Assembly (NCBI RefSeq): GCF_006345805.1
Contig: NC_043003.1
Location: 91,884,001-91,948,000, forward strand
Source: Octopus sinensis
Lineage: Eukaryota
Direction of reading: 5' to 3'
Length of the DNA: 64,000 nt
In this document: piece after piece, positions 23,508 to 64,000 of the stretch
Layout: each line of letters opens with the position of its first letter
How positions within the stretch are numbered: the first letter of the stretch is position 1
Position numbers and translations under genes: made by a program
Notes under the pieces: generated by a model
Databases searched by the model: none
Seen by the model: the letters and a program-made list of their open reading frames with translations, nothing else
Told to the model about the DNA's origin: nothing

Positions 23508-23653
23508 GTATCCTGCAAGGTACTTCTGCTCTTTTGCTGGCATTTGATGAGTCTGAAGTCCGTAAAATAATTAGAGTATGCAAGAATGTACTGGAATATT
23601 TAGCTATAACTGAAGTTGTAGATAAGATGGAGGATTTGGTTACCTATGTCAAG
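23508..23653 (+). CDS. VCL: Vinculin exon: (G)[48 protein letters not shown]
   Basis: tttccag acceptor, GTAAGT donor; 146 nt, phase 1 to 0; follows a 20.8-kb intron; matches vinculin [25 protein letters not shown]. Confidence 0.97.
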
Positions 23654-26717: not shown

Positions 26718-26869
26718 GTTCTGGTTTTATCGAGGCTCAGAAGAACCGTGACTATGTGGTACAGAAGATGTCTGATGAAATCCATGAGATAATTCGGGTG
26801 TTGCAGCTCACAACCTATGATGAAGAAAACTGGGATGCTGATGATTTGACTGTGATGAAGAAAGCTCAG
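26718..26869 (+). CDS. VCL: Vinculin exon: (G)SGFIEAQKNRDYVVQKMSDEIHEIIRVLQLTTYDEENWDADDLTVMKKAQ
   Basis: tcttcag acceptor, GTACTT donor; 152 nt, phase 1 to 0; EIIRVLQLT motif typical of the vinculin/alpha-catenin family. Confidence 0.97.
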
Positions 26870-31063: not shown

Positions 31064-31136
31064 TCAGCAATTGAAGGAAAACTGAAGCAAGCTAGTGATT
31101 GGCTACAAGACCCAGCAGCTTTGGTTGGCAGCGCAG
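31064..31136 (+). CDS. VCL: Vinculin exon: SAIEGKLKQASDWLQDPAALVGSA(G)
   Basis: gtttttcag acceptor, GTAAAA donor; 73 nt, phase 0 to 1; matches SIDSKLNQAKGWLRDP. Confidence 0.94.
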
Positions 31137-32462: not shown

Positions 32463-32611
32463 GTGACAAAGCCCTCCATCAAATTTTAGAAGATGCTCGG
32501 AAAATTGCTGAGAGGTGTGCTGATCCTGCTGAGAGAGATGCCATCATACGGAATGTGGGAGATATTGAATCCATGGCAAATAGTTTGGCTGAACTTAGGC
32601 AGCAAGGAAAA
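32463..32611 (+). CDS. VCL: Vinculin exon: (G)DKALHQILEDARKIAERCADPAERDAIIRNVGDIESMANSLAELRQQGK
   Basis: tacttcag acceptor, GTAAGG donor; 149 nt, phase 1 to 0; vinculin internal repeat. Confidence 0.96.
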
Positions 32612-35737: not shown

Positions 35738-35930
35738 GGTAGCAGTCCACAGGCCATGGCTTTAGCCAGAGAAATCCAGAATAAACTTGGCAGTTTGCAG
35801 CAGTTAACCCAGATGGGAATTGTTAACACAGAACGTAGTGGGATCCGTAAACCTGCTCCTACAGTATCTGGCAAGGTAGAACAAGCCCAGAGGTGGTTAG
35901 CTAATCCAGGACTTGATGATAAAGGACTTG
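35738..35930 (+). CDS. VCL: Vinculin exon: GSSPQAMALAREIQNKLGSLQQLTQMGIVNTERSGIRKPAPTVSGKVEQAQRWLANPGLDDKGL(G)
   Basis: tttttcag acceptor, GTAAGG donor; 193 nt, phase 0 to 1; GK[VI]EQAQRW motif. Confidence 0.97.
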
Positions 35931-37003: not shown

Positions 37004-37149
37004 GTGAACAAGCTACACGCATGGTTGTTGCTGACGGGCGCAAAGTGGCAGAATCCTTGACTGGACCACAAAGAGCAGAGCTCCTTCGTCTTTGTGATGA
37101 GACTGAAATATTAACCAATCAGTTGGCAGATATGATCCGAAGGGGACAG
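37004..37149 (+). CDS. VCL: Vinculin exon: (G)EQATRMVVADGRKVAESLTGPQRAELLRLCDETEILTNQLADMIRRGQ
   Basis: ttatccag acceptor, GTAATG donor; 146 nt, phase 1 to 0. Confidence 0.96.
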
Positions 37150-37873: not shown

Positions 37874-37966
37874 GGTAATACTCCCCAAGCTCAAGCATGT
37901 GCACGCCACTTATCTGAGAAGTTACATGCTCTGAAGAACAAAATTGGTGAAGGCCTTGTTAATCAG
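37874..37966 (+). CDS. VCL: Vinculin exon: GNTPQAQACARHLSEKLHALKNKIGEGLVNQ
   Basis: aatcag acceptor, GTATTG donor; 93 nt, phase 0 to 0; matches GESPQARALASQL. Confidence 0.93.
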
Positions 37967-38689: not shown

Positions 38690-38759
38690 GTGGCAGAGGA
38701 CTTCATTGATATGACCACCCCTCTGAAGCAGTTGAGTGATGCTGCAATTGTTCCTCTTG
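38690..38759 (+). CDS. VCL: Vinculin exon: VAEDFIDMTTPLKQLSDAAIVPL(G)
   Basis: ttacaacag acceptor, GTAAGT donor; 70 nt, phase 0 to 1; matches VSDVFSDTTTPIKLL. Confidence 0.95.
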
Positions 38760-40191: not shown

Positions 40192-40343
40192 GGGTCCCTG
40201 GCCGAGAACAAAAATTTGAAGAAAAGTCACGTAACTTTTTAAGTCAGTCAGCAAAACTTGCTGAAACTGCCAACATGGTGGCAACTGCTGGTGGCTGTGC
40301 AAACAAGAAAACTGTTGAGGCTATTTTTAGTACTTCTGCTCAG
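40192..40343 (+). CDS. VCL: Vinculin exon: (G)VPGREQKFEEKSRNFLSQSAKLAETANMVATAGGCANKKTVEAIFSTSAQ
   Basis: gtttctag acceptor, GTAAGA donor; 152 nt, phase 1 to 0. Confidence 0.96.
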
Positions 40344-41198: not shown

Positions 41199-41376
41199 GC
41201 CAATGACTTGTCTCCTCAAGTTGTAAATGCTGCCAAAATAGTTTTGATCAATCCTACTAACCAAGCTGCTGTTGACCACTTTGATCTTCTGAAGAAACAG
41301 TGGACTGAGAACATGGAGCGTCTACGGACATTGGTCGATGAGGCCACTGATACAGAAGCTTTTATTCTTGCCACTG
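41199..41376 (+). CDS. VCL: Vinculin exon: ANDLSPQVVNAAKIVLINPTNQAAVDHFDLLKKQWTENMERLRTLVDEATDTEAFILAT(E)
   Basis: tattacag acceptor, GTCAGT donor; 178 nt, phase 0 to 1; matches [25 protein letters not shown]...LVDEAID. Confidence 0.97.
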
Positions 41377-42882: not shown

Positions 42883-43080
42883 AACAAGGAATTCAGAAAG
42901 ACAAAGAAAAGGTTGAAGAAGGAATTCGAACCATCAATCCTCCAATAATCGTTACTAATGCTTCCAATATTGCTCGGCGTGCAAACCGTGTACTGCAAGT
43001 TGCTCAACAAGAAGCAGAGAACAGTGAAGATCCACAGTTTGTGGAAAAAGTTAATTCTGCTTCTGATGTCCTGAAATCTA
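42883..43080 (+). CDS. VCL: Vinculin exon: (E)QGIQKDKEKVEEGIRTINPPIIVTNASNIARRANRVLQVAQQEAENSEDPQFVEKVNSASDVLKS(T)
   Basis: cttttccag acceptor, GTACGT donor; 198 nt, phase 1 to 1; IARRANR and ENSEDP motifs. Confidence 0.97.
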
Positions 43081-43850
43081 GTACGTTCAAATTAGCATTT
43101 TGATTACTCTTTCAAATGTAATGCTTATTTAGTCACATTATTTTGAATTAATCATGCATTATCTTGTAGCTTTGAGATTTCAATGATGTAATTGTTTATT
43201 TTTAGAATGATATTGTAGGGTATGTATAAGATGTCAGATCTGACCATATTGAACATAAAACAGGTAGAATATTTTGGCTGGATATGGCTGGTTTAAAGGG
43301 ATGTCCTTTACTTTTCATTTTCTTTCTCAATACCAATATTGTTTGTTTCTTAAACTTATATAATCATGAGAAATTGAAGAGAATAGCTGTGATCGATACT
43401 GGTATTTTAGATATTTCTTCTCTCCATGATGTACCAAATAACTGAAATTTACTTAGCTTTTTTATGACAAAGTTTTTAATGTTTGGTTGCCTGTAAAATT
43501 TACAATCTTTGTACATAACATTTAATAATAACGCTATCACATTACCAAAGATTTGATTGTTGTATTCAGTTGTACTGTGTGCCACACTAGAATATTTATC
43601 CTCACCGTGCACACACATACCACTTTTAATTGCTGTCAGGCTTTATTGGGTAAAACAAAAACCCAACTTTTTTTTAATGAAGAAACTGCAAATTTCAGTT
43701 TTACTCAGGGCCTCAGTTTTCTTTTTAGAACAACTCGACAAAAAATTTCTCACTCATGCCTTTTTATTGTTATTGTAAGTGTCCTTGCTTGAGCAGAACT
43801 TATAGTTGACTGAAGGAAGCTTTCAATTTTTACATATAGCTATAGTTACT

Positions 43851-46691: not shown

Positions 46692-46806
46692 TTAATATCT
46701 GCAGTTGGCCAGGTGAGAAAATCTGTTATGGTAACACCAAAAGAGGACAACAGATACACTCAAGCCTTCCCACCCCCACCAGATATGTCTCAACTGAGTA
46801 TCTCAG
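46692..46806 (+). CDS. VCL: Vinculin exon, end of head and start of proline-rich hinge: LISAVGQVRKSVMVTPKEDNRYTQAFPPPPDMSQLSIS
   Basis: ttgttacag acceptor, GTAAAA donor; 115 nt, phase 0 to 1; FPPPP corresponds to the Ena/VASP-binding DFPPPPPDLEQL of vertebrate vinculin. Confidence 0.96.
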
Positions 46807-48231
46807 GTAAAAATATCTCAGAATATCAGATATGGGCAATATTATTTTCTGAAGTTTTAAACACCTTCTTTATTTGTATTACTGCTGGTTATAATGTCTT
46901 TGTATCTCTGATGCATATATTATTATTCCACACACATATAGTTGATGATACACTCTGTTTTCTGTTGCTGTAATTTTTTTTTTACATTTAAGCTCTTTTT
47001 ATTTTGTTTTCTTTGTACACCTGATACCACTTTTTTGGTTTGCATTTTAATAGTTTACTCCGTAGAAGAATCTTTTCTACAATATCACATTTATATTTGT
47101 GCATGTAATATATCTTCTGTACCTCTATGGCATATATATATAAATATATGCATGTGTTTGTATGTATATATCGATACTATGTATATATTATGTGTATTTA
47201 TGTGTATATAACTACTACATATATGTATTTTAAATGCTCATATCTGTGTTTGTATATGTACATAAGTGTGTGTGTGTGTTTGTAAGTGTACATATGTGTT
47301 TAAGTATGTCATGTATGTGTGTGTATATCTATATATCTATCTTTTTCTCTCTCTATATATATATATGTATATTATAATTGTATTCTGGTAGTCACATTGA
47401 CCATTTAAATCTAACATCTGTTGCTATATTTATTTATATTAGTATTTTGTAACATAAATTTACATAATCACATCATTTCTATTTTTATAAATTCATTATT
47501 GCTGTCTATATTGTATGTTTGAACCCCAAACATTATAATGTATTACCTGGATTTTCTATCTTTTATAGGCATTACTTTTTTTTTTATTTCTGTGTTCACT
47601 TAAAAAATTTTTTTTATTATTTTTCTCCACAGCATTGCATGAATTGTTTTATCACGTATCTATAATATAATTCTCTAATTAAACAGATGGAAACAGAATA
47701 GTACTCACATATTAACATATATGTGTACATATGCATACATGTGTACATGCAGTTTTATATATCTGTTGGTAATACAATCATATTTTGGTAGCCACATAAA
47801 CCAATTAAAACAACTATATGCTGCAATATTTAATTTTTATTATATTAGCATTTTGCAGTAAATATATCATCATTTCACATCCAGCTTCCATGCTGACATA
47901 GGTTCCTGATCTAATGCAAGTTTTTAACCACCAATTGTTAAAAGATGACAATGATGATATATTTGCAACCAAATGCTGTTCAAAGTTGATGATTACTCCA
48001 TCATTATTCAGTTTCTCACCATAAAACGTCTTTCATGCAGCAAAAATATATTCATAGTAACAGACTGAATTATAACTTCTGAAGTATTGGTAGAAATTCT
48101 ATAATCAATTGTGTCACTCATAGGAATAGGAGTATTGCTTCTATTAGTTTAGTAACAGAAGGTTCCGAATTTGAGTCTAGTCTGGAATAATAATAATAAT
48201 AATAATAATGATAATAATAATAATATTAATA

Positions 48232-48579
48232 ATGGTTCTGGGTTCAGTCCCACAGCATGACACCTTGGGCAAGTGTCTTCTACTATAGCCTCGGGCCAAC
48301 CAAAGCCTTGTGAGTGGATTTGGTAGACGGAAACTGAAAGAAGCCCATTGTATATATATATGTATGTGTGTGTATATGTTTGTGTGTCTGTGTTTGTCCC
48401 TCCAACATTGCTTGATAACTGATGCTGGTGTGTTTTTGTCCCCGTAAGCTAGAGGTTCAGCAACAGAGACCGACAGAATAAGTACTAGGCTTACAAAGAA
48501 TAAGGCCTGGGGTCAATTTGCTCGACTAAAGGTGGTTCTCCAGCATGGCCACAGTCCCATGACTGAAACAAGTAAAAGA
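48232..48579 (+). mobile_element. 5'-truncated SINE family A copy on the + strand
   Basis: Begins just before the B box ggttcagtccc and ends gactgaaacaagtaaaagaa; preceded by (AAT)n. Confidence 0.9.
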
Positions 48580-48586
48580 ATAATTA

Positions 48587-48890
48587 GAGCATAACAAACC
48601 AGACCTAGTGGTGGTGGGCAAGGTGCACCACATACTATATAATTGATATTGTGTGCCCCTTTGACCCACGATTAATCAAGAATGAAGGTGGAAGAATAGA
48701 CATATACAATCCTCTTAAGTACAAAATAGCCCAGTTATGGAAAATGAAGAATGTGAAGATAGTGCAATGTATCAGGAGGCATCAAGAGGAATATAAAGGA
48801 AATCTGAATTGAGTGCCCAGTAGAACTGTTACAAAAGGCTTACCTCCTTGGCACCAGAATAATAAAGGAAGTATTAATTTGTTGAAAAGA
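48587..48890 (+). mobile_element. Restriction-like endonuclease fragment of an R2-superfamily LINE
   Basis: HNKPDLVVV and, after a frameshift, IIDIVCPFDPRLIKNEGGRIDIYNPLKYKIAQLWKMKNVKIV: a PD...D pattern. Confidence 0.65.
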
Positions 48891-51104
48891 ACAGATAACA
48901 TGGTACTGTTGGCTGCAGGTAACAAGCCTGGTGCACATGCAAGACTCCAGGATTTCCAACAAAACCTGAGTTAAAAAGAATAATAATGATAATAATAACA
49001 ATAATAGTAATACATTTGATAATGGCCGGTGTTAACCCAGTTGAAATGTAGTATAGATATAAATATTAAAATATGTTTGTTTGTTTTTATTATTAAAGAT
49101 GAAGTTAATGAGCCTACATGTCTGAAATCTCCACTTATCTACAAATTATTTGACCAATTTTTTTCTTTCTTTTTCCATTTCTTTTTTCTTTTTTTTTCTA
49201 ATTCATTTCTGATTTTTAGAAAACATCATCAGCAGCAGCAATAACAAGTGCAACAATGTTATGAAATTTATTTTCTATTTGAGTTTATTTATTTTCATTT
49301 CAGATGCTACTTGTGTGTGTACATACATATATGTATGTGTTGTTTGCTTGTCTTTGTTGTACTTAATAATTTATGCTCAAGGCAGTGGATTGGCAGAATT
49401 GGTTGTGTCGAGCAAAATATTTGGTGGTATTTTGTGATAACTCTTAAGTCTCGAGTTCAAATCCCACCAGGGTTGAACTTTACCTTTCATCCTTCCATGG
49501 TTTAATAACATAAATACCAGTCTAGTAAGTACTGGGGTCAATGTAATTGACTATAGCCAACTCCTAAATTTAAGTCTTGTGTGCCTATGTTTCAAATTAA
49601 TAATTAAGTTATGCTGGTGTCCCTTTATTCCAGTCCTTGTGTACCTATGTTTCAAATTAATAATTATGTTATGCTGGTGTCACTTTAGTTTGTTGTCTGT
49701 TTGTGTTTTAAATGTGAATGTGAATTAAATGTGAATTTAATTAACATGCAATATTTGGTTGTAAGTGACAATGTATTGTTGTTTGTGATTATCTTTTTTT
49801 TTTACATGATAAAAAGGAGTGGAGGAACACAGCTCCTCATCTCCTCCAACTAATTCAACTTTTTTAGTACTTAACTAGAATGTGAGTTAAACATATGGAT
49901 AAGAAATGAGATTGAAACAACTTCATTCAAGAGCTATTCTCTGCTATTCCATTTTTGTGTGAGAGCAGGGTTCAGTCCTTAAACCCCAGACTATCAACTT
50001 GTTCATTAGTTATTTCTGTTTTCACTGACCAGCTAGACTGATTGACAGATAAACAATTGGTCCAACTTATCTAAAGCACACTCTGACCCAATCTTATTGG
50101 AAGTAGCAGGATGTCTATTGTAATTCTTGTCAGTGATACAAATACAAACGTCTGTGATAGTTATTTATTTTGAAGAATAGTCGTTGAGAGAATGGCTAAA
50201 ATATTGAACTATTGCCCTTCAATCCCTTGAGTTTAAACACTACAGCCAACACTATTTTTGTCTCCTTGGAGAAAACAAACTCACTTTACTTTAGCATACA
50301 CCAGCTGACCATAGATATTATATTCATATATTTATATATGAATGTGTGTGTGTGTTAGCTGGTGGCTTTGAGATTTTGACAGCATGATTATTTATTTTTA
50401 GAATGACATTCAAGGGTGTGATAGGCCAGATCTGGACATTTTTGAAGATGAAATGAGTAGAATATTTGGGTTGGATATGGCCAGTTTAAATGCTAAAGGG
50501 TTAATGTCAGCAGATTATTTAACTAATGCTAGTTTCTAGTTATATCTTCAAGCATAAGCATAAGAGCAGTTACCCTGGAGCCCCATGAGTCTAGAGGACC
50601 CAGTGTTAATCTATGTTTACTGGTGGTTGTGTAAGTTGGGACCTTCCAGTGTATTATTTTGCATGGAGGATATATAATGTTCCATATTAACATGTTAAAT
50701 TTTACATGAAGTGAGCTGATAACTTTAGTCCACATGAAGAGAGCTGTATTTACCGTCATAAACTTTATAGAGGTTCACCATCAGTTTGATGATGTAGAAA
50801 TTTAATATTGTTTGAGCTTTGATAAGATACTGAAACAGTTTTACACTTCTAAAGAGTTGATCCTTGAAATGCTACTGTATGAGGGAGAGATAGAAAAAAA
50901 GAAGAAACTGAACTAGCTGGGTTGAAAACAAAATTAAATTGAATGTCTGCCATTGTAAATAACAAAGAACTTTCCTGTCTGTCTTGTTGTCTCTTTTAGT
51001 TGGTTGCTCTCCTTCCATTTTGATCCTCCCACATTTTTTTCTTCCACCTTGCTTATTGTTATTGGTACTGCTCTAATACAACCTAACGTTTCTGTTCCCT
51101 TCAG

Positions 51105-51305
51105 CTAAGGGTGGCAGCCCTAAAGCTCCCCTGTCTCCACGCAGGGTTAGAGTGCCTGTTCAGATGGCACCTCCAACAACAACGCTCACCTTTCACAATA
51201 GCGCTTATGACCCACTTACACCACTTATCAACCAGCTGTCCAGTTGTGTCCCCACACCTCCAAGTGGTCCTTCCAGAGATGACTGTACATACATATATAA
51301 TAGAG
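51105..51305 (+). CDS. VCL: Candidate cassette exon in vinculin hinge: (A)KGGSPKAPLSPRRVRVPVQMAPPTTTLTFHNSAYDPLTPLINQLSSCVPTPPSGPSRDDCTYIYNR
   Basis: CTAAC branch point at 51083-51087, pyrimidine tract and ttcag acceptor; open in phase 1; AG|GTAGTA donor gives 201 nt. An alternative weak donor after 51284 gives 180 nt, also in frame. GC-richer than flanks and Pro/Ser-rich. No homology evidence. Confidence 0.7.
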
Positions 51306-51613
51306 GTAGTAAACTAGTCAAGTGTTGTTTGCATGGAGTTTAAGCTCAGACACCAAATGTCTTTTTTTTCTCCCTTCTTTCAGTTGCACTCACTCCTCAA
51401 GTTCACTTGTCCACTAAGTTAATTCAAATTAGCAATTGTATTATCATTTTTATTATTATTACTACTAATACTACTACACATTAGGTATATTTTTGATTAC
51501 TTTTTATGTAAATTATATCATATTATCATAGTTGTATCACAGAGGAAATTTTCCATGCCTAAATGCAAGTGTTTTTTTTTTACCTTGTTTATTCTACTTC
51601 AACAACATTTCAG

Positions 51614-51649
51614 ATGAAGGAATCCCTAATCTTCATCCCATATTAAGTA
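51614..51649 (+). CDS. VCL: Candidate 36-nt cassette micro-exon in vinculin hinge: (D)EGIPNLHPILS
   Basis: Long T-rich tract and atttcag acceptor; GTAAGA donor at 51650; open in phase 1; length divisible by 3. Confidence 0.45.
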
Positions 51650-51659
51650 GTAAGACATG

Positions 51660-53030
51660 TCGGGGATATCCGGGCAAGAGAGTTTGGAAATAGCTTGAGA
51701 ATTTATTTACTTTCAAGTATGATGAGTCGCACAACTTATTGGATCATAGTCACTTTTGAGCAGATTGTCTTCATACAGCATATCTTATGAAACCCATAAA
51801 TTATAGCTAATATAACTCACCAATACAAGCTACTAAATCACAGAATGATCTAGTTGAGTAACCTTTGGGATACCATGAAAAGACCAGTGAGAGCCATTTT
51901 CAAACAAAAGCCAAAGAGAATGAGGTGTAGGAGGTGAAACAAATCTTTCAAGATTGAGTTGAGGACTGTGGTGGAGGACTTGGGAGATATGAGCATAACT
52001 GGGCCTGGGAGCAAACTCACAACAGGACTTTCAGCGATGCTGGGTGGAGATCTTGTCATCCAGTCCAGTACTACATGGAGAGCAGGAGGGATTAAAAATA
52101 GGAAAAACTACTAATTTTAGAGTCTTCAAGCTATAAACTGTATTTACTTTTAGTAGATTGCTGAACTTGAGGAAACATGAATGTGTGATATTGTATCCAA
52201 GGAAGAAATCATTGCATATATTTATTTTGTTTTATGTGACTATGGACAAGTGAGCCAATAGTTTCCTAACTTCAGCTAAGTTTTGTTTCCCATGATGAAT
52301 TTAAAAAAAAAATTTGTACTTAATATTTTTTTGAATGCATGTAGCATGGTGTTGAAAATGAGAAATTCCATAATTTTTTCTTTTATCATATTATTTCAGA
52401 AGTATGTTTAATTAATAACTCATTCTGTTTATGTAAAACGTTTATCTCTCATGATATTTCAATTGAGCAAGCCTTTTACAATAATTATTAATGCTTAATA
52501 CATAGTAAAATAATAATAGTAGAATGTAAACATATATACAAACTCATGTACATGGACCTTATAGGGAAAGGTGCAAAGGCTAAGCGTACTGAAGTGTACT
52601 TTCAATATTCCTGGTAATATTTGTTCATTTTTAAGTATGATGACTCTCACAATCTATTGGGTCAGAGTCACCTCTGATTTTAATCTCCATGCAGCATATC
52701 TTATGATACACATAAACTATAGCCAATGTAGTCACTTGTCAACACAAGCTACCAAATCATGGAATGAGCCAGTTGAATAACCTACAGGATACCATCACTC
52801 TAGAATGGTAGAATATGCTCATTTATGTGGTACACATGTCCATGAACAGATCAGTGGTAGGCTGTTTCAAATGGAAGCAAGACAGGGAGTGCAGGAAGTG
52901 AAACAGATCTCTCAAGATAAGGTTAAGGACTGTGGAAGAAGACCTTGTTGGTATGGGTGTAACCTAGCCTGGAAGCAGGCTCATAACATGTAGAGTTTGC
53001 AACCATGCTGATAACTCTTGTCATTCAGCT
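51660..53030 (-). mobile_element. Two diverged CR1-type reverse-transcriptase fragments covering the same segment (about 51660-52070 and 52560-53030)
   Basis: Mutual similarity (aagtatgatga, cagcatatcttatga, gtgaaaca.atct.tcaagat, aggactgtgg). Minus translation SPVVSLLP...TTVLNSILKDL...GIPKV resembles RPIALL...VIN..L...DISKAFD. Confidence 0.5.
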
Positions 53031-53328
53031 GGTAATAATTAGTAGATTATTAATCAATTTCTGTTTATTTTCATGCCAATAAATAATTACTTATAGTCCT
53101 TTATTTGGCTAAAGACAGTCATGTATAGAGGACTTATAATAATTTGTAAATGAAACAAAAATCTTTTTGGGTACTCAAGCAATATTTTCAAAACCTGATT
53201 GTGGTTAACAGTAAAAGAAAAGAAAAAAAAAATTTAATATCCTTGTTGCATTTATATATTCTTAATTATGACAAGAATTTCAAGGGTGACAGGTTGCCTG
53301 TAAACTATAAGTTAGGTCTCTTGTCTCA

Positions 53329-53370
<42 letters not shown>

Positions 53371-54313
53371 ATATATATAAACTTTTCTGTAATTATATTA
53401 ATTGTATAACTTTTCTGTTTTCATTATTAATATCTGATATTTCACCTGTGTCTCTTCTTTCTTACTATTGTATATCAATCATCAAATCTGTTTTACAATG
53501 AATGACTCTGGCTAATATATTGAAACCCTTCTGCTTTGAGAAATATTTGAATGTTTCAGATACTGGTTTACTGATTTTGTTTGTTTTGCTTTCATTTCTT
53601 ATCTATAAATATATATATATATACACACACATATACACACACACACAAACATGCACACAGATATGTATTTTATATATATTATACATTATACATATCTATA
53701 TGTGTGTGTGTGTGCTTGTGTGTTACTTCACATTTATCTAATGCATATGTTTAAAGTACATATACACAATGACTAGAAGGCTATGATAATTCATATAAAA
53801 GATAGCATTTAATGATATAAATAACTCCTGGCTATCTCATCAAAAATTATAAGAAGACAATAATGTTTTATGCATATAAATGTATACAAAAAAAAAAGAA
53901 GAAAAAGAAAGATATTCCTTCTTTCTCTCTGTACAGAATTAAAAATATTACTATTTAATGTTAATTTATTTTAATTTAAAACAAGCTGGTCCACCAGTAT
54001 TTTAAGTTAGAGCAATATCATTCTTTTTTCTTTCTTATATCCTGAACTATGCATTAGATAAAATTGAAAATATGCTGTTCTTGCAAATGGTATTAACACT
54101 TAAGCATATTTCAAAGTATTTTTAATACCATTTGCATCTACGATATAATGATTACTGCAGAATGGTTTGCATTCTTCATGTATTCATGTTTTCAATGTTT
54201 AAAATAACTTTCCTTGTGTGACAGGGTTTCAAACCCTCCCTACCTTTTTTCATTGAAAATTCATTAAATATTGATATTTCTCTTGTTTATTTCAAACAGT
54301 GTTTCTTCTTACA

Positions 54314-54314
<1 letters not shown>

Positions 54315-54387
<73 letters not shown>

Positions 54388-54526
54388 CATATCTACCTAT
54401 CTATCTATCTATCTACATATCTACCTATCTATCTATCTATCTATCTATCAACCTACCTACTTATCTATCGATCAATCAATCGATAGATAGATAATTTAGA
54501 TAGATAGATAGATAGATAGATAGATA
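54315..54526. repeat. (TCTA)n array followed by an inverted (TAGA)n array
   Basis: Directly visible; switch point at 54462-54489. Confidence 0.95.
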
Positions 54527-57057
54527 CACACACACACAACATAGATGAATGATAAATTCATACACATATGTTTATAGATACATACACACACACACGTATA
54601 TCATCATCATTTAATGTCTGTGTTCTATGTTGGCATGGGTCAGGTGCTTTGACAGGATCTGACAAGGAGCCAGACTACATTGAGCTTCAATATCAGCTTT
54701 GGCATGGTTTCTATTGCTGGATGCTCTTCCTAATGTCAATCACTTTACAGTGTGTAGTGGGTGTTTTTTTGTAACACTGACACTAGTGGAGTTGCAAGAC
54801 AAACAAAAAACACCCCCCACCTTCCTGCAACAGAGTAGGAATCAACAGCCAGCTTTGTGCCAGGTGTTGACAGGCTAAAGTATGATGCAGACACACATAC
54901 ACAAAACCAAGAAGCAATATATGGTATATTTATTCAGTGTGGATATATACTATTTGAATTTGTTAGGCCTAAGGATGGTGAATTTGATTAAAATCTTTTT
55001 CTCAAGATATCTTCTTCTGTGAGAGGGTTCATAAATACATACACACAGGCCCACATATATAATCATGTATAATTATTTACAATTATTTCTCATCTGATAA
55101 TCATTTGAAACACTTCCTCTTCATTAAGGCATTTTATCATAAACATCCTTGCAAACAGGGTGGGAGGTGGCATTAGGAAGGGCATCTAGCCATAGAAAAT
55201 TGTAATTAATCTTGTTGGATTTCTGCAAGCATGGAAAGGTAAACATCAAAGTGATGATGATGATGGTAATGATGATGCATTATGGAAGAGAGCGCAATGG
55301 TCTTGAAGGATCATTGTAAAATGTTCACTCACAAATTTTGTTTTGGTTGTACCATGTAGAAAGCACTGGTGCTGATGCCATGTAAAAATCACCCTGTACA
55401 CTCTGTGGAGTGGTTGGTGTTAGGAAGGGCATCCAGCCATAGAAACCAAGTCAAAGCAAACTACGGAACTTGGTGTGGCCCCTGGCCTTGACAATTCCTG
55501 TCAAGCAACCCAACCCATGCCAGCGTGGAAAATGGATGTTAAATGTTGATGATGATGAGGGTATATATAGAAACCATGAACTAGATACGTGCTAGTGAGA
55601 TATTTTTATAAATACAGTTATTTTTATATCTGCAACATACAATAATAATCAACCTGACCATAATCATATAATACAACTAAGATTTTACGCAAATAATTAA
55701 TAATTATTTTACTATCATACATGGTTGATAATTTATGATATTGCTTCAAAGGTTAAAATTTTATATAAATTCTGTGATTTCTGTGGTTAAGAATGTAACT
55801 GCCTCACACAATACATTTTGACTGAAACTAATTTCCTCATGGCTGGAGGGAATTCATATGGATTATTCTGAATGGTTCCCTCTACAGCATAAATCTGCTG
55901 AAGTAAGCTGATCAGAACTGCTTAGCAAGAACAAACAACTGCAACTGCAAAAGAATAAATTGCCCTCTCACTGTATTTGAACTGTTACTCTGTACATTCT
56001 AAACTTTCTAGTGTAATACTCATAGATTATTAAATAGCATACCAATCATGATATGGAAGATCTTGATTTGCTTTTATTAAAGTATTTTTTCAAATATTAT
56101 TAACTTCTATTTTGGTATGTGAATATTTTGTATGTTTTCAGGAACACTGGTACTTTTATTCTGCACTTGCTTCATACTCACAAATGAGTTCTTTTTTTCT
56201 TTTTTTTTTATCCTGTTTCCTTCCCTCTTATTTTGTATTCAATTCATTACTTTCAACTTACTAATTGTACTTAATTATTATTTATTTCATAATCATTTGT
56301 TTTTTGTTTTTTTTGTAACTATTTTCCAAATTATTTTTATAACTTAATAATGATAATATTAAAAGTAAAAAAGCAAACTGCACGATATCAATTAATTGCT
56401 AAGATTTTAATCTGAATCATATTAGGTATAATTAGTACAAAAGTAGAAAATTTAGACAGAAATGAGCAACAGACCTACTGACAAGGTATCTGCTACACAT
56501 ATTTTCCTTGTGTGCTGCTCTTTCTGTCCCAAATTTGTGTTTATAATGTCTAATGGTCAGCTGTGAAGTATATTAAAAATTTGATCTTTCTTTAAATAAA
56601 AATTATAGTAACTAAAATTTTGTATGTATGCTAAATATGAGCACAAATTTATATATTAATAACTGAAAGGCCAACGTGTACAAGCTACTGATCACTTCTG
56701 TTGATACAGACACCTGTAAGGTAGAGGTAGTAGAATAGTGCAGGAAAAAGAAGTCTGTAAATGCTAAGAGATAATCATGATAAGCATGGGAAAAAGGGGA
56801 GAATTAGAAATAATACTCATAAACAAGGTAGGAAGCAAGTTGATGTAACAAACCATGAGATAATCTGAGATAGGAAATTTTTCTAATATTCTGCACTGTG
56901 AGAATTCGAAATTTGCAGTGTTCCTAACTTCACAGTAGTGAATTGGTATAAAGTAGTATGTCACCAAAGAGAAATGTGTCTGAAAAGAGCTATGTTAATC
57001 ACATGTTAGTTATTCAATTAATTAGGTAGTACAGTATGACATTATCATTCTTAATAT

Positions 57058-57349
57058 CTAGTTAAGCAGATCAGGCCGAAAATGTCGCTAGAAGCTAGGA
57101 TCACCAAGCATAGATTCGCATATTTTGGTCATATTATGCGGAGAAAATCCTTGGAGAAGGACATCATGCTCGGAATGGTCAGTGGCAAGAGAGGGAGAGG
57201 CCGACTAAGAACCCGCTGGCTTGACACCATCAAGAGTGATACCGGAATGGACATAGCCAATCTGAAAGAAGCGGCCCAGGATAGAACTGACTAGAGGACA
57301 CTGATCCATCTAGTAACCGAGAGTCGACTTCGACTGAGTGGATAGAGAG
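57058..57349 (+). mobile_element. 5'-truncated RTE (BovB-like) LINE 3' end
   Basis: LVKQIRPKMSLEARITKHRFAYFGHIMRRKSLEKDIMLGMVSGKRGRGRLRTRWLDTIKSDTGMDIANLKEAAQDRTD*RTLIHLVTESRLRLSG*; a single TAG where Trp is expected. Confidence 0.9.
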
Positions 57350-58021
57350 AGTAGAGCTGTATTGTTAAGTGCTAAAAGATTTTAATGCGTTGGGGAAAAG
57401 CTATTATAGAAGGCCTGAAACTGATGGACAAAAATTTCAAAGTAGCTGAGAGAGTTTTCAGCAATGTGGGTTATAAATATGATTACCCTGCATAAAATGT
57501 TAAAAACATTTTAGTAAAGTCACTAAATGAGATGTTTGGCCAATTGACTGTAACATAATTTCGTATATGACAGATATACAAGGAGTCGTTAGCAGTAAAT
57601 ACAGATATGAGACCAAGTCCATGATCAAACTCAGCTGACATGCTAGATGTGGTTGAGAGTTTCTGTTACACATGTGATATAATTTTTGCTACATGTAAAT
57701 ATTGCAAATAGTTATTAGAGTAAGGAAAGAAGGTAGGATTGTTGTCGAGAGAGATATTACTTATAGCATTCAAAGATTAGAAAGGATAGGTAACAAATGA
57801 CCGAGACATATCAGTAATATACTTTGCAGCAGAAGTGTTCGAACTATGCCGACATTAAAAGCAGAAGATAAGGACAATAACAATCAGGAGTAACTTGATG
57901 AAATGTCAATATTAATGTAATTCTAAACTTTGGCTGCTTCTGTATTTCATTACTGTTACACTTGAGTTCATATAAATACATATATCCAGGCATATCTATA
58001 GAGATACACATAGCCAGCCAA

Positions 58022-58061
<40 letters not shown>

Positions 58062-58162
58062 GGATACACACACAAGCATACATACATATACATTGTTGAG
58101 CACTTTCCCCTTTCCTATTCCCTTTGTATGTGTATGTATTTTTGTGTACATCTGTATATCAG

Positions 58163-58201
<39 letters not shown>

Positions 58202-58209
<8 letters not shown>

Positions 58210-58582
58210 ATATTTTGGAATGGTCATTTTGCCAGTTTAGCCAATAAAAACACACGCACTATATATTTGGTGTTATTTTTCTTCAGTGTTATTTATTTTT
58301 TACATTAATCTTAATCTTATTTCGGCCAGAGTTCTTTCGAAACACTCCTGTATTAGAAATACAAAATGGCTGACGGTTAGTAAGGAGAGACACAAATAAG
58401 TAAGAAGAAAACAAATGACCACTGATGCGGTCACAGCGGTGTGACAAAAGAACTCTGGCAGAAATAAGATTAAGATTAATGTAAAAAATAAATAACACTG
58501 AAGCAAAATAACACCAAATATATAGTGCGTGTGTTTTTATTGGCTAAACTGGCAACATGACCATTCCGAAATATAACAATAT
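58202..58582. mobile_element. Foldback/MITE-like element with 136-bp terminal inverted repeats and a 109-bp spacer
   Basis: 58202-58337 matches the reverse complement of 58447-58582 at 132/136 by manual alignment; (TA)n on the left. Superfamily not assignable. Confidence 0.9.
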
Positions 58583-58618
58583 CTGTTTCAACACACGACT
58601 TCACATAAAAAATCTTGC

Positions 58619-58624
<6 letters not shown>

Positions 58625-58662
<38 letters not shown>

Positions 58663-58737
58663 GTATGTATGTATCTGTGTGTGTATATATATATGTGTGT
58701 GTGTGTGTATATATATATATGTGTGTATATATATATA

Positions 58738-58777
<40 letters not shown>

Positions 58778-58835
58778 GTGTATATATATATGTGTATATA
58801 TATGTATATATATATATATATATATGTATAAATAA
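58625..58835. repeat. Long TA/TG low-complexity tract; similar tracts at about 7780-7830, 11745-11780, 43855-43935, 44165-44320, 53335-53380, 62995-63045
   Basis: Directly visible. Confidence 0.95.
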
Positions 58836-59456
58836 TAATAATAATAATATAAAGGGTAAAATCATAAATGATTTTTACCAAGTGGCCAGTGTCTATTTTT
58901 CAGTGTTTGGTGAGGCGCAAGCCAAGCCCTTGTTATAATTCTATATATATATATATATATATTGATGTGCTTACATCAATATATATGTTCACATATGTGC
59001 ATATGTATATACACAATATCTTACCCATAACTACAAGTTGAACAAAATACAAGTTTTGTTGGATATATTGTTAGGGATAAAACTTTATATATGCATGTGT
59101 GCGTACTCATACACACATGTATTTAATACTTTCGTTGGTAGTAACTTCAAAGTTTGGCCTTAAATGTTTTAATAATAATATTTTAATAAATTATATACTA
59201 CATAGCATTATAAAACAACATCAATAATTATAATTATTATTATTATTGTTGTTGTTATTATTATTATTATTGCAACAATAATCTAAAACTTACTTTTCCA
59301 GTGTATCTTGTAAAATAAAGTAGTAAATGTAAATAAACAAAATTTAAAAAATACATTCACAACAAAATGTTTTTCCAATGAATTTAATAAATTGTTTTTA
59401 TTAATTTTAATATTTTTCTTTTCATTTCATAAATTTGATTTGGTTACTTTTTACAG

Positions 59457-59501
59457 TCCCTGATCAACATGCTATGGATGGAAGAAGTGAGGTCCTAGAA
59501 G
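59457..59501 (+). CDS. VCL: Candidate 45-nt cassette micro-exon in vinculin hinge: (V)PDQHAMDGRSEVLE
   Basis: Pyrimidine tract and tttttacag acceptor; AG|GTATTT donor; phase 1 to 1, stop-free; balanced composition within very AT-rich flanks. Confidence 0.6.
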
Positions 59502-59571
59502 GTATTTTAGTAAAAAACTAATCTATGTTTTACTTGCACTAATCTATGTACCTGATGAGGTGTGTGTGTAC

Positions 59572-59615
<44 letters not shown>

Positions 59616-60962
59616 ATTCCAACATACTTATATAGTTATCTACATAAATGCATGTGTAGAAACTCCATCAAATTGATACTCACATGCAAAAGGAACCATA
59701 TGGAATGAAACATCTGTATGTCATTGGATTAAACTGGCTTATGCTTGTACATGTGTTCCACTCTCTAAATATCAGTAACTGAAATCTAGTGACAAGCATT
59801 GCAAGATGACTGAAATCAAACAAGCAGTTGGTGTAGCTGCCAGAGTACCTTCTCTTAGACTTTTCCCATCAGAGATTTGAACAAAGCATATTTACACACA
59901 ACTGGATAACTGTTGACTCTCAGGAGTTCATTCTCACTTTAACAGGCCTTGTTTTTTGATCCTGCAACATCATCATTTAACGTTTGCTTTCCATACTGTC
60001 ATAAGTTGGACAGTTTGACTGAGGACTGATGAGCCAGAGGCTGCACCAGGCTCAATCTGATCTGGCAAAGTTTCTACAGCTGGATGCCCTTCCTAACACC
60101 AACCACTCTGAAAGTGTAGTGGGTGCCTTTTACATGCCATCAGCACGAGGGCCAGTCAGGTGGTTCTGGCAATGACTATGCTCAAAAGGTTTTTTTACAT
60201 GCTACCTGCATGGGAGCCAGTCTGGTGGCACTGGTAATGACCATGCTCAAATGTTGTTTTTCACGTGACACTGGCACATGTGCCAGTAAGGCAACATTGG
60301 CAATGATCACGTTCCTCACCAAGCAGGCTGATGGAGTTGTCACTGACAAACCAGTCATACAAGTGGTCCTAGATTACACACACAAAAGTGCATGAATAAA
60401 TACATTTCTTAGATATCAGTTGTATTATTGTTATGCACTCAGTCTTAGAATTAATTTTTGAACTGATAACCAAACTCTAACAAGATTACTTACTGGGACA
60501 ATCTTTTTCAGTTATGTTGAGAGAGAAAATTGAAACTCTCTCTATTTTGTTTTTGTTCTTTTAAATAATTTAATGAGGATTTCTCTAAATTCAATTTTTG
60601 TTTTGTTAAAACTTTTTCTGTAAATTTCAATGTTTATCAATTAATTGTTATTAATAATGATCATTATAATTCTTATTGTTACCAACATTTGATTGCTATT
60701 ACAATTATACGGAGTTACTAATTATCTGTTTCATTTAATTTTGTTTTTTCTTCCTTTTTCTATAGTTTAATTTGTTAATTGGATAAAATAATTTAAAACA
60801 AATTTATCACAAAATATTCTTTCACCGAATGAATTCATTAATCAGTATGTTTGTTGTTGTTGTGTGTATATATGTTACATATTATTTGTGTTGATGTTTG
60901 ATATTGCGTTTCTTTTTGCTATTAATATTGCACTTCAATTTGCTGACTCCATTCATTTGCAG

Positions 60963-61082
60963 CTACCGTACAGAGGGAACAACATTACGCTCCAGAGCAG
61001 AAGAGTCCCATGTTTGTTCCTCCTCCCCCAGTGCTGCCACCACCACCACAGGATAGCTACAATTATGGATATGATTACAGAG
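60963..61082 (+). CDS. VCL: Candidate 120-nt proline-rich cassette exon in vinculin hinge: (A)TVQREQHYAPEQKSPMFVPPPPVLPPPPQDSYNYGYDYR
   Basis: CTGAC branch point at 60943-60947 and tttgcag acceptor; AG|GTTCTT donor (weak); phase 1 to 1; two PPPP runs. The ORF track shows a different frame. Confidence 0.75.
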
Positions 61083-62765
61083 GTTCTTTAGCACTTAGTG
61101 TTCCTTAGAATGGCCTGAGTGTGATGTTTGCATGTTAGCTCTTTCAAAATTCTTTCTTACTAAAACTGGCATACTCATTTTGAAAAAAAAAAAATTCTTT
61201 TGAAATTACCTTTCAAGCAAAAAATGAATTAACTACCCCCCCCCCCCATCAGATCCCTTTTTATTACTTCTACTACCATTATTACTCTTACTACTATTAC
61301 TGCTGTTGCTACCTTAACCTGTGCTCCTTTTTCCTCAAAATTTGTGCTCAAGTAATTCTTTGGAATTCCTTTACATCTTTGAAATTATTTCCATTTTTCT
61401 CATTACTTTTTGTCTTTAAACAATCTTTTTATTTTTTCCCCAATTTTTAGTTTAATTCATAGAATGACAGAAGTAAATTTCATTGACAGGGCAAAATAAT
61501 GAATCATAATATATTCCATTTACCAACTGAAGCTCATACATGTTTTGTGACTGAGTACACAAGATGTGAATTTACATACTTGCTAGATCTATAGTTTGCT
61601 GTCAGTGCTGCACTCATCTTTTAGAACAAGCACTGCTCATTTACATGTTTAGTAGTCCTTAAGATATGAATCTACCTACTTCAGTCTCTCTGAACTTAGG
61701 CCTATAGTTTGCTATCAGAGCTGCACTCATCTTTTACAGTGAGCATCATTCATATACATGTTCGGTGGTTGAGTGCTTATGATATGAATCTGCCTATTGC
61801 AGTCTCAAATCATAGGAAAAATAAAAAGAGTTTATATTTATCCATAAATATCTTCTAGAACATCTGCATATTCTAAATCCCAGTTTCTTCGTGTAAATGC
61901 AATTGCCTAACTTAGTTGTGTGGTATGGTTGCCAAAATACTTCCCAAGTGAAATGGTGGAACCTCCCTTCTTCTAGGTTTTATTTTACATAACCAAACTG
62001 TATGGATAGGTAACTAATACTAGTTCCATTTAATAGTTGAGTATTTAACCTTTAAAATACATGCATAAAAAATTTATCCTCATCATCATATCCCCCTTAC
62101 CATGCTTGCAATAGAAGGCACTTGTCCAAGGTACAATGCAATGGAACTAAACCTGGAACCATGTGGTTGACAAGCAAACTTCTTAACTAGATAGCCATGC
62201 TTGGAAATGATTCGCTTCATTTTCCAGTTTTTTGTATTTACTATTTGCTCTCAAACCATTTATAGATTTCTTGGTTTCTCCTATTTCATCTGTCAAAATT
62301 AATAGTAGCTTTAATTATGTTTTGAAATTGAAATAATGGGGATAATATTTAAGTAGTCTTTTTTACTAACCAGATGATGTTATCCCTGAAGGGGATATAG
62401 TTTTTACAAGATAGTGTAGAAATCACTACTTCTACCATCACTCTCTCTCAAGAAAAGCAGACTAAAGATATAAAGCTATAGGTGACTTATAAACATTTCA
62501 AAGATGTTGATAAATCTAATTGATCAATCCATTAAATATTTTTCTGTTCTTAAGAGGGCGTGTCCCATAACACTGAGAATGAATAATATATATAATGTCA
62601 GTACAAGACATGTTGTTATATGATATTATCTTGCATGTTAGTGTACATCAGAATAGAATTCTATATAGATATAATAGAACTCTTCTTACTTACAAAAAGT
62701 GTATAGGTACATCAAAAGAGGTGATGTCAATTCAGTTATTGACTGCTTTATGTGTGTGTGTGTGT

Positions 62766-62804
<39 letters not shown>

Positions 62805-62997
62805 AAATACTGTTTTGCATGTTGGAGAATACATCAGACTTAGAATTGTATATAGATATGGTGTAACTCTTTACCCTCACACATATTGGGATGTGTACTG
62901 AGAAGTTATATCAATAACAATATACTTAATTATAAATAGTAGTTGAATTTGGTATGTCTCACATATTATACCAAAACATTTATTACACATTATATAT

Positions 62998-63043
<46 letters not shown>

Positions 63044-64000
63044 TATTCCATAGAATATAGATGCATTTTGTTTTTCATAGTTTTTTTTTTTACTTTTTGC
63101 ATACTTAGCTGTTGTATGAGTGAATTAGTTATTTTTTGTAAATTTTAGTTCTGAAAATTCATAGTAGAAAGTATATGTAATGATGTACTTACATATTAAA
63201 TGTTGTATTTATTACTAGTACCCTTCTTGTGAATAGTATGTTTTATTTATTATAAGTTTATGTAGATTTATTAGCATTTATATAGATTTATTATTTGTAT
63301 TTTAACATTGATTGTAGAAGTTAAATGGTGTTATGTAACTATTATTAGTTCAACCCCTTTTTCATATTCAACTGTCCTTGAATCAGTAAATCAGGTCCAT
63401 TGTTAATACATTTAAAAGAGAGTGTTCATAGATTAACAAATTGCAAATATTTGAGTTGAAAGAATTTTTTTTATTAATAGATCATAGGTGTGTATCTTGT
63501 CTTTGGCACAACTCTGTATCCTTAACAAAGAAATTTAGCTCCATCAATGCCTCTGTCCACCTGGCCACAGCTATTTATGTAGCTTGCAGTAGTGAGCTTA
63601 CATTCCCTTCTACCTTGGCAAAATCTATAATAAACTGATAATGTTCCACCTCTAGGAGAGAGTGTTACATCTCGCTGATGCTTAATAACACAGAAACTAA
63701 TATAATTTCTCTCGTCCTTATACATTTTTGTAATATGTTTGATTCAAGTATACAGACAAATATCACTAAATCTGACTATTGCTGATTGCATAACCAAGCC
63801 CTAGTGTTGTTCTCAGCAAGATCTATTTGAGAGAGTTACAAGAAGTGATCTATAGTCTAAGGTTCAATCCCTTACTCCAACATTGTCAGGTTAAACATGT
63901 AGCATTATTTATTTAACATTTAATTCCTAAAACAGTCTGCTCTTGTGGAAAGTTTCTTTAGGCATTTCCGTTTTGTTTTTAGTTTCAACTGGAAAAATCT

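What the first reader, a model, noticed from the sequence alone, without database searches (positions are those of the whole stretch)
60963..61082. 120-nt cassette adding two more polyproline motifs and a Tyr-rich patch
Seen: it encodes ...EQKSPMFVPPPPVLPPPPQDSYNYGYDYR in the phase needed, with a CTGAC branch point 17 nt upstream. Known: [FLWY]PPPP is the class I EVH1 (Ena/VASP) ligand, and LPPPP fits. Inference: inclusion would add Ena/VASP or SH3/WW docking sites to the constitutive FPPPP, and YNYGYDY offers tyrosine phosphorylation sites. The donor is weak; read-through gives GSLALSVP* (stop 61107-61109), a possible tail-less product.
Basis: partly seen in the sequence, partly recalled or inferred. 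Interest (0 to 1): 0.7.

Follow-up and report, generated by a model that had tools for sequence, protein, structure and literature searches.

The report
Optional proline-rich exon in vinculin hinge
A 120-base stretch inside a long intron of an invertebrate vinculin gene looks like a real, probably optional, coding exon that would lengthen the protein's flexible hinge with two proline runs, but no transcript or cross-species data could be reached to prove it is used.

Summary
The sequence is as described, with two small corrections. The read-through stop is 61106-61108, not 61107-61109. Only LPPPP fits the EVH1 motif; FVPPPP does not.

The + strand carries a vinculin orthologue: 14 in-frame exons from 2465 to 46806, the last encoding FPPPP and ending in phase 1. 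The tail exons lie beyond the window.

60963-61082 is 120 nt and phase 1 to phase 1. It has a normal acceptor, a CTGAC branch site and 50% GC against 25-33% in the flanks, and it is not a repeat copy. In the last intron only it and a second candidate (51105-51305, 201 nt, same phases) pass a composite exon filter without being transposon-derived.

The donor GAG|gttctt is poor. Both candidates carry the same 14-mer, GTGWTGTTTGCATG, 25-47 nt past their donors. These are the only two copies in 64 kb. It is a GU-rich plus UGCAUG (Rbfox-type) enhancer arrangement, of the kind that drives the vertebrate metavinculin exon.

Best reading (about 0.5): a regulated cassette exon. Rivals: not an exon (about 0.25), a constitutive counterpart of vertebrate hinge motifs 2-3 (about 0.15), a terminal exon (about 0.07).

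No close relatives or transcripts were available. EVH1/SH3 docking and Tyr phosphorylation remain inference. This would be an ordinary kind of feature, of modest interest.

The parts
46692..46806 (+). Last constitutive vinculin exon in the window. It encodes ...VRKSVMVTPKEDNRYTQAFPPPPDMSQLSIS and ends CAG|gtaaaa with one spare G (phase 1). The acceptor is either 46692 or 46705.
60943..60947 (+). CTGAC branch-point-like motif. Branch A is at 60946, 17 nt before the exon. It is followed by a pyrimidine-rich tract with no intervening AG.
   Evidence: pyrimidine fraction 0.71, within the range of the constitutive acceptors
60961..60962 (+). Acceptor AG (ttgcag|CT).
60963..61082 (+). Candidate cassette exon B: 120 nt, phase 1 to phase 1, 50% GC. 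It encodes (A)TVQREQHYAPEQKSPMFVPPPPVLPPPPQDSYNYGYDYR(G).
61083..61088 (+). Donor gttctt, very weak: T at +3, C at +4, T at +5.
   Evidence: -3.3 bits; all 14 constitutive donors score at least 0.4; U1 duplex -4.2 kcal/mol; 13 of 14 constitutive donors are -5.0 or stronger
61106..61108 (+). In-frame TAG reached if the donor is not used (…YDYRGSLALSVP*).
61121..61134 (+). GTGATGTTTGCATG: a GU-rich element next to UGCAUG (Rbfox-type intronic enhancer). TGCATG starts 47 nt after the donor.
   Evidence: PMC11874969; PMC11216089
51105..51305 (+). Second candidate hinge cassette A: 201 nt, phase 1 to phase 1, 50% GC, CTAAC branch site, donor GAG|gtagta. It encodes (A)KGGSPKAPLSPRRVRVPVQMAPPTTTLTFHNSAYDPLTPLINQLSSCVPTPPSGPSRDDCTYIYNR(G).
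51322..51335 (+). GTGTTGTTTGCATG: the same 14-mer downstream of cassette A. TGCATG starts 25 nt after that donor.

Best explanation
60963-61082 is a genuine but optional (cassette) coding exon of a vinculin gene. It lies in the intron of more than 17 kb between the FPPPP hinge exon and the tail exons, which are outside the window. Its acceptor and branch site are ordinary. Its donor is too weak to be recognised well on its own. Inclusion is therefore proposed to depend on the GU-rich + UGCAUG module 39-52 nt downstream, bound by an Rbfox-family protein and partners. That would make inclusion tissue-specific, with muscle or neurons as the obvious guesses. Because the exon is 120 nt and phase 1 to phase 1, both inclusion and skipping keep the frame. 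Inclusion lengthens the disordered head-tail hinge by 40 residues. It adds a second Ena/VASP-type FP4 motif (LPPPPQD), a further proline run (VPPPP) and a Tyr-rich patch. This would plausibly raise the valency for tetrameric Ena/VASP and for PxxP readers. A sister cassette at 51105-51305, with the same phases and the same downstream 14-mer, probably works the same way. Shown: the sequence anatomy, the frame, the gene identity and the rarity of these features in the window. Inferred: actual splicing, Rbfox dependence, tissue specificity and all protein interactions.
For: Gene identity: Pfam Vinculin E 7e-88. Human vinculin scores 122 bits against about 46 for alpha-catenin. A 14-exon, 671-codon model has no stop. 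Frame: the upstream exon ends in phase 1 and B joins in frame. Exon-likeness: GC is 0.50 against flanks of 0.25 and 0.335, and 1.6% of intronic windows reach that level. B is not a repeat copy. The coding frame scores best of the three, at the same level as the known FPPPP hinge exon. In the last intron only A, B and two transposon-like copies pass the composite filter. Across the whole window, both strands and all phases, everything else that passes is transposon-like or antisense to a real exon. Two in-frame PPPP runs are rare. Cassette character: the length is a multiple of 3 with symmetric phases, which holds for only 3 of 14 constitutive exons, and the donor is weak. TGCATG starts at +47 for B and +25 for A, whereas no constitutive exon has one within 290 nt downstream, and only 3.5% of positions have one within 60 nt. 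The 14-mer GTGWTGTTTGCATG occurs exactly twice in 64 kb, at these two places. Shuffling the two flanks gives p about 0.016. Literature: GCAUG adjacent to GU-rich elements is a conserved Rbfox/LASR splicing module (PMC11874969). Rbfox1 drives the vertebrate metavinculin exon through flanking GCATG sites (PMC11216089). LPPPP is a bona fide EVH1 FP4 motif (PMC8789275).
Against: There is no transcript evidence and no orthologous sequence. The protein database and the metagenome scans hold no close relative of this organism. The donor carries essentially no signal beyond AG|GT. Codon statistics cannot tell a proline-rich linker from non-coding sequence: +0.02 bits per codon. A second frame of the segment is also open. 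CCACCACCACCA and CCTCCTCCCCCA are repeat-like, and the neighbourhood holds other trinucleotide repeats plus a C12 run that also reads PPPP. The UGCAUG test was chosen after looking at the region.
Confidence: 0.5

Rival explanations
1. It is not an exon. It is a GC-rich, repeat-flavoured island inside a long intron that happens to be open in the needed frame and to sit behind a usable-looking AG. It could also be a decayed former exon that has lost its donor.
For: The donor is indistinguishable from a random GT: 33% of random GTs score as high. The codon score is about 0. Two frames are open. The proline runs come from CCN-repeat-like DNA, and a C12 run 150 nt downstream also gives PPPP. Trinucleotide repeats flank the segment. 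There is no external support of any kind.
Against: Several features coincide: the right phase, acceptor plus branch site, a multiple-of-3 length, 50% GC, two PPPP runs at the place where vinculins carry them, and the shared downstream 14-mer with UGCAUG. Non-transposon segments passing the composite filter are otherwise absent from 128 kb x 3 phases. A clearly constitutive exon of the same gene (ending at 43080) also has a very weak donor.
Confidence: 0.25
2. It is a constitutive exon: the counterpart of the second half of the vertebrate hinge (PPKPPLP and PPPRPPPP). In this lineage that half would be split from the first tail helix by an extra intron.
For: The layout is collinear. Human has FPPPPPDLEQL, about 20 residues, then VPPP-R-PPPPEE. 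Here we have FPPPPDMSQL, about 25 residues, then VPPPP-VL-PPPPQD. In lamprey an intron follows FPPPPPDLDSLN, and the next exon carries the two further proline motifs.
Against: The donor is weaker than 13 of 14 constitutive donors. Symmetric phases, the UGCAUG module and a sister cassette sharing that module are all typical of regulated exons. The lamprey intron is in phase 0 and lies 2 residues earlier, so it may not be the same intron. The similarity is low-complexity and cannot be tested statistically.
Confidence: 0.15
3. It is an alternative terminal exon. The weak donor is ignored, translation stops at 61106-61108 (...YDYRGSLALSVP*), and the product is a tail-less vinculin.
For: A good acceptor is paired with a poor donor, and an in-frame stop follows 8 codons later.
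Against: No AATAAA or ATTAAA occurs for 712 nt after the stop, although the window averages 1.9 per kb. The downstream UGCAUG module fits enhancement of a donor better. The A12 run at about 61183-61195 could produce internal-priming artefacts that mimic a 3' end.
Confidence: 0.07

Closest known systems
Metavinculin exon (vertebrate VCL exon 19)
   Same: It is an optional, frame-preserving exon of the vinculin gene in the hinge/tail region. It has GCATG sites in the flanking introns through which Rbfox1 promotes inclusion in muscle (PMC11216089). An orthologous copy is visible in lamprey at L002:17381-17446.
   Different: The metavinculin insert is 68 residues and lies inside the tail, after KWSSK. 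It carries a duplicate of helix H1 and changes actin bundling. Exon B lies before the tail, has no H1-like sequence and adds proline-rich linear motifs instead. There is no sequence similarity.
Proline-rich hinge of vertebrate vinculin (FPPPP, PPKPPLP, PPPRPPPP)
   Same: It is a disordered head-tail linker with an FPPPP followed by two further proline runs in the same order and with similar spacing. In vertebrates FPPPP binds Ena/VASP, the other motifs bind SH3 proteins such as ponsin and vinexin (PMC2148189 was listed but not read), and the region also binds Arp2/3; all of this is from my own knowledge.
   Different: In vertebrates motifs 2-3 are constitutive and share an exon with the start of the tail (lamprey). 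Here they would be a separate 120-nt exon with a weak donor. The runs lack the flanking K or R of the vertebrate SH3 sites.
Tissue-specific cassette exons encoding disordered segments with short linear motifs, controlled by Rbfox/(U)GCAUG modules
   Same: A weak splice site, symmetric phases, a disordered motif-rich peptide, and UGCAUG next to a GU-rich element just downstream (PMC11874969).
   Different: Regulation here is inferred from sequence alone, in an unidentified invertebrate.

Membership tests
Vinculin gene (host gene) | Match to the Pfam Vinculin family, and closer to vinculin than to alpha-catenin | tested here: met
   PF01044 E 7e-88. Human and chicken vinculin score 119-122 bits against 41-46 bits for alpha-catenins.
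Vinculin gene (host gene) | Proline-rich hinge with FPPPP after the head domains | tested here: met
   The exon ending at 46806 encodes QAFPPPPDMSQL, aligned to human FPPPPPDLEQL.
Vinculin gene (host gene) | Five-helix actin-binding tail | not testable with these tools
   No tail-like sequence lies in 46807-64000. The tail exons are beyond the window.
Cassette (skippable) coding exon | Acceptor AG with a pyrimidine tract and branch point | tested here: met
   CTGAC sits at -17, the pyrimidine fraction is 0.71 (top 11% of random AGs) and no AG intervenes.
Cassette (skippable) coding exon | Recognisable GT donor | tested here: inconclusive
   GT is present, but GAG|gttctt scores -3.3 bits and -4.2 kcal/mol against U1. 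One constitutive exon of the gene is comparably weak.
Cassette (skippable) coding exon | Open frame in the required phase and a length that is a multiple of 3 | tested here: met
   120 nt, phase 1 to phase 1, no stop.
Cassette (skippable) coding exon | Transcripts both with and without the exon | not testable with these tools
   No transcript data were reachable. The protein database holds nothing from this organism.
Cassette (skippable) coding exon | Frame conserved in related species | not testable with these tools
   No close relatives were found in the protein or metagenome collections.
Class I EVH1 (Ena/VASP) ligand, FP4 motif [FWYL]PxPhiP | Motif present | tested here: met
   LPPPP, followed by QD, matches. 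FVPPPP does not. Motif definition from PMC8789275, which also notes 4,994 instances in the human proteome, so specificity is low.
Class I EVH1 (Ena/VASP) ligand, FP4 motif [FWYL]PxPhiP | Binding to an EVH1 domain | not testable with these tools
   This needs a binding assay.
Rbfox-dependent alternative exon | (U)GCAUG in the proximal downstream intron, often beside GU-rich elements | tested here: met
   TGCATG starts at +47, preceded by GAGTGTGATGTT. The same 14-mer lies at +17 to +30 of the sister cassette; PMC11874969.
Rbfox-dependent alternative exon | Inclusion changes with Rbfox level or with mutation of the motif | not testable with these tools
   This needs a minigene or knock-down experiment.
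Metavinculin-type insert | Insert within the tail that carries a duplicate of helix H1 | tested here: not met
   B lies before the tail and has no H1-like motif. Compare the lamprey metavinculin exon, VNRPMMAAARSLLMETHRWSSE.
Alternative terminal exon | Polyadenylation signal shortly after the stop | tested here: inconclusive
   The first AATAAA is at 61820, 712 nt after the stop, which is no more than background density.

The most novel reading that the evidence does not exclude
An invertebrate (apparently molluscan) vinculin carries two Rbfox-type, tissue-regulated cassette exons in its hinge. These would tune the number of Ena/VASP and PxxP docking sites. This would be an independently evolved functional parallel to vertebrate metavinculin, using the same splicing regulator but altering the linker instead of the actin-binding tail.
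Probability: 0.3. Interest if true: 0.5.

Novelty: new member of a known kind. Interest (0 to 1): 0.35.

Why it matters
Vinculin's hinge is where Ena/VASP, SH3 adaptors and Arp2/3 dock, and its length affects head-tail autoinhibition. In vertebrates the only well-known splice variant, metavinculin, changes the tail. If this exon and its sister at 51105-51305 are real regulated cassettes, then invertebrate vinculins diversify at the hinge. Cells could then set the valency for actin-polymerising partners through splicing. The GU-rich + UGCAUG control module acting on vinculin would also be older or more widespread than the metavinculin exon itself. If the exon is not used, the finding is just an intronic GC island. 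Either way it is cheap to settle with RNA-seq.

Tried and rejected
(1) Orthologue and transcript search. A spliced hinge query including both cassettes, run against the 5.8-billion-protein collection, gave only three distant vinculins at 48-53% identity. Two metagenome scans gave nothing for the hinge plus B and one hit at 38% identity for conserved exons. These negatives say nothing about conservation.

(2) Full-text search for the peptides: no paper. Searches for invertebrate or cephalopod vinculin isoforms found nothing relevant.

(3) Codon-usage log-likelihood trained on the 14 constitutive exons. It cannot score a proline-rich linker: the true FPPPP exon scores -0.04 per codon and B scores +0.02.

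(4) Exon duplication of A and B. The protein alignment is not significant (p = 0.07). DNA similarity is limited to the downstream 14-mer. Paralogy is not claimed.

(5) Repeat or transposon origin of B: no other copy in the window and no Pfam hit. Genome-wide copy number could not be checked.

(6) Non-coding RNA: no Rfam or tRNA match anywhere in the window.

(7) Alternative donors inside or just after B: none is better. It is not a U12-type donor (by eye).

(8) Polyadenylation signal for the tail-less product: none nearby.

(9) Class I or II SH3 and PPxY motifs in B: none by inspection.

The exhaustive representative-protein search and structure prediction were not run. The collection lacks close relatives, and the peptide is a disordered linker.

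Full report
**What the window is.** The window is AT-rich (about 34% GC) animal DNA full of microsatellites and transposon fragments. Its + strand carries a vinculin gene. The concatenated exon pieces match Pfam Vinculin with E 7e-88. The C-terminal head region scores 122 bits against human vinculin and only about 46 bits against alpha-catenins.

I then fixed the boundaries from splice sites and phase continuity. The result is 14 exons: 2465-2658, 23508-23653, 25028-25196, 26718-26869, 31064-31136, 32463-32611, 35738-35930, 37004-37149, 37874-37966, 38690-38759, 40192-40343, 41199-41376, 42883-43080 and 46705(or 46692)-46806. Together they give 671 codons with no stop.

The protein has two rather than three central repeats. 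This fits the statement that invertebrate vinculins have six head bundles and vertebrate ones seven (PMC5201009). The last exon encodes ...NRYTQAFPPPPDMSQLSIS and ends CAG|gtaaaa with one spare G, which is phase 1. Nothing resembling the vinculin tail lies between 46807 and 64000. The intron after the FPPPP exon is therefore longer than 17 kb, and the tail is outside the window.

**The observation.** The finding is accurate.
- The segment runs from ttgcag|CTACCG... to ...TACAGAG|gttctt, coordinates 60963-61082, 120 nt.
- Joined to the spare G it reads A-TVQREQHYAPEQKSPMFVPPPPVLPPPPQDSYNYGYDYR and leaves one G, so it is phase 1 on both sides.
- CTGAC is at 60943-60947, with the branch A 17 nt before the exon. 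A pyrimidine-rich, AG-free stretch follows.
- Read-through gives GSLALSVP and a TAG at 61106-61108.
- Only LPPPP fits the EVH1 consensus [FWYL]PxPhiP (PMC8789275). In FVPPPP the aromatic residue is not adjacent to the prolines.

**Is it more than chance?** An open frame of 53 codons is common in this DNA, so the frame alone means little. Other features are rarer.
- The segment is 50% GC against 25% and 33.5% in its 200-nt flanks. Only 1.6% of intronic 120-nt windows reach 50%, and most of those islands I recognised as repeat or transposon copies.
- The segment has no other copy in the window.
- PPPP in any of six frames occurs at only three other non-exonic places in 64 kb, one of them a C12 run. 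Here two lie 18 nt apart, in the frame dictated by the upstream exon.
- In the last intron I searched for phase-1-to-phase-1 open segments with AG and GT ends, a pyrimidine tract of at least 0.65 and GC of at least 0.42. Only four loci passed: this one, a second candidate at 51105-51305, and two transposon-like copies.
- A stricter filter over both strands and all three phases of the whole window returned nothing else outside the vinculin exons except transposon-like copies and the antisense of a real exon.
- Codon-usage scoring is uninformative for a proline-rich linker. The real FPPPP exon scores -0.04 bits per codon and this segment +0.02, though the proposed frame is the best of the three.

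**The weak point is the donor.** GAG|gttctt scores -3.3 bits on a generic donor matrix, a score that a third of all GTs in the window reach. All 14 constitutive donors score 0.4 or more. The predicted U1 duplex is -4.2 kcal/mol, weaker than 13 of 14 constitutive donors. However, the clearly constitutive exon ending at 43080 is weaker still, whichever junction is chosen. Weak donors are therefore tolerated in this gene. No better in-frame donor exists in or just after the segment.

**A sister cassette and a shared intronic element.**
- 51105-51305 is 201 nt with a CTAAC branch site, a strong acceptor and the donor GAG|gtagta. It is also 50% GC and phase 1 to phase 1. It encodes a Ser/Pro/Thr-rich peptide that likewise ends in Y-x-Y-x-R.
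- Both candidates are followed by the same 14-mer. GTGTTGTTTGCATG lies at 51322-51335 and GTGATGTTTGCATG at 61121-61134. These are the only two exact matches to GTGWTGTTTGCATG on either strand of the window.
- TGCATG starts 25 and 47 nt after the two donors. None of the 14 constitutive exons has a TGCATG within 290 nt downstream, and only 3.5% of window positions have one within 60 nt.
- Local alignment of the two 100-nt downstream flanks beats 98.4% of shuffles.
- UGCAUG is the Rbfox binding site. Placed downstream of an exon it promotes inclusion (my own knowledge of established work; the passages I read do not state the position rule). GCAUG directly beside GU-rich elements such as GUUGUU or GUGUG is described as a conserved Rbfox/LASR module from C. 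elegans to human (PMC11874969).
- The vertebrate metavinculin exon is itself promoted by Rbfox1 through flanking GCATG sites (PMC11216089).
- I chose to test this motif after reading the region, so the statistics are indicative rather than formal.
- Protein-level similarity between the two cassettes is not significant (p = 0.07). I do not claim they are duplicates.

**Comparison with vertebrates.** In the lamprey vinculin locus (L002) an intron follows FPPPPPDLDSLN. It is in phase 0 and lies two residues earlier than here. The next exon encodes both further proline motifs plus the first tail helix: LCEEEERPPPKPPLPEGDLPPPRPPPPEERDDEF...ARKWSSK. The present segment is collinear with that second half: VPPPP-VL-PPPPQD against VPPP-R-PPPPEE. 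A rival reading is therefore that it is the ancestral second half of the hinge on an exon of its own, and not an extra. The low-complexity similarity cannot be tested statistically, and the deciding exon is outside the window. The weak donor, the symmetric phases (true of only 3 of 14 constitutive exons) and the enhancer-like module tip the balance toward optional use.

**Read-through product.** The first AATAAA or ATTAAA after the stop is 712 nt away, although the window averages 1.9 per kb. Nothing supports a dedicated 3' end. An A12 run about 100 nt downstream could mimic one in oligo-dT data.

**External evidence.** None could be obtained. The protein collection has no sequence from this organism or close relatives. 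Two metagenome scans found nothing useful. No paper contains the peptides. There is no Rfam or tRNA feature in the window. Conservation and expression, which are the decisive tests, remain open.

**Verdict.**

| Reading | Probability |
|---|---|
| Regulated cassette exon lengthening the vinculin hinge by 40 disordered residues, with one canonical FP4 motif, another proline run and a Tyr-rich patch | about 0.5 |
| Not an exon at all | about 0.25 |
| Constitutive exon | about 0.15 |
| Terminal exon | about 0.07 |

The proposed docking of Ena/VASP or SH3/WW domains and the tyrosine phosphorylation are inference. There is no PPxY and no basic residue flanking the proline runs. FP4-type motifs are very common: 4,994 in the human proteome according to PMC8789275. 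This is a new member of a well-known kind, namely tissue-regulated cassette exons encoding disordered, motif-rich linkers. It is of modest interest, raised a little by the parallel with Rbfox-controlled metavinculin.

Noticed in passing
window 51105-51305 (+): A second candidate hinge cassette: 201 nt, phase 1 to phase 1, 50% GC, CTAAC branch site, strong acceptor, donor GAG|gtagta. It encodes a Ser/Pro/Thr-rich peptide (KGGSPKAPLSPRRVRVPVQMAPP...CTYIYNR) and looks a better exon than the one in the finding.
   Followed up: partly
window 51322-51335 and 61121-61134 (+): The identical 14-mer GTGWTGTTTGCATG (GU-rich + UGCAUG) lies 17-39 nt downstream of both candidate donors. These are the only two copies in the window.
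   Followed up: yes
window 43049-43084 and 46692-46705 (+): The junction between the last two constitutive exons is ambiguous. 43080->46705 gives ...DVLKSIGQVRK, and 43067->46692 gives ...NSASDLISAVGQVRK. Every possible donor is weak (U1 duplex -1.6 kcal/mol at best), and there are tandem acceptors 13 nt apart.
   Followed up: partly
window 14578-15024 (-): A mariner/Tc1-type transposase fragment (Pfam Transposase_1, E 1e-12) inside the 21-kb intron.
   Followed up: partly
window about 4250-4600, 6325-6640, 9684-9875 (-), 11204-11464 (-), 12715-13165: Several copies of one short GC-rich interspersed repeat, whose translations share ...DTCPRCHAVGLNPEPCGW.../...LGSKLLT.... These copies account for many of the GC-rich islands in the introns.
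   Followed up: no
window 61183-61195 and 61236-61248 (+): An A12 run and a C12 run just downstream of the candidate exon. The A run could cause internal oligo-dT priming, and the C run reads as PPPP in two frames.
   Followed up: no
L002 17381-17446 (lamprey vinculin locus): An exon-like copy of the first tail helix (VNRPMMAAARSLLMETHRWSSE|gtaacg), preceded by an acidic stretch, lies between the KWSSK exon and the GNDIIAAAKR exon. This is the position expected for a metavinculin-type exon in lamprey. It is not part of the deposited protein P0002.
   Followed up: no
window 2465-46806 (+): The vinculin encoded here has two central repeats instead of the three found in vertebrates: the exons at 32463 and 37004 both align to all three human repeats. 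It also lacks about 30 residues before FPPPP relative to human.
   Followed up: partly
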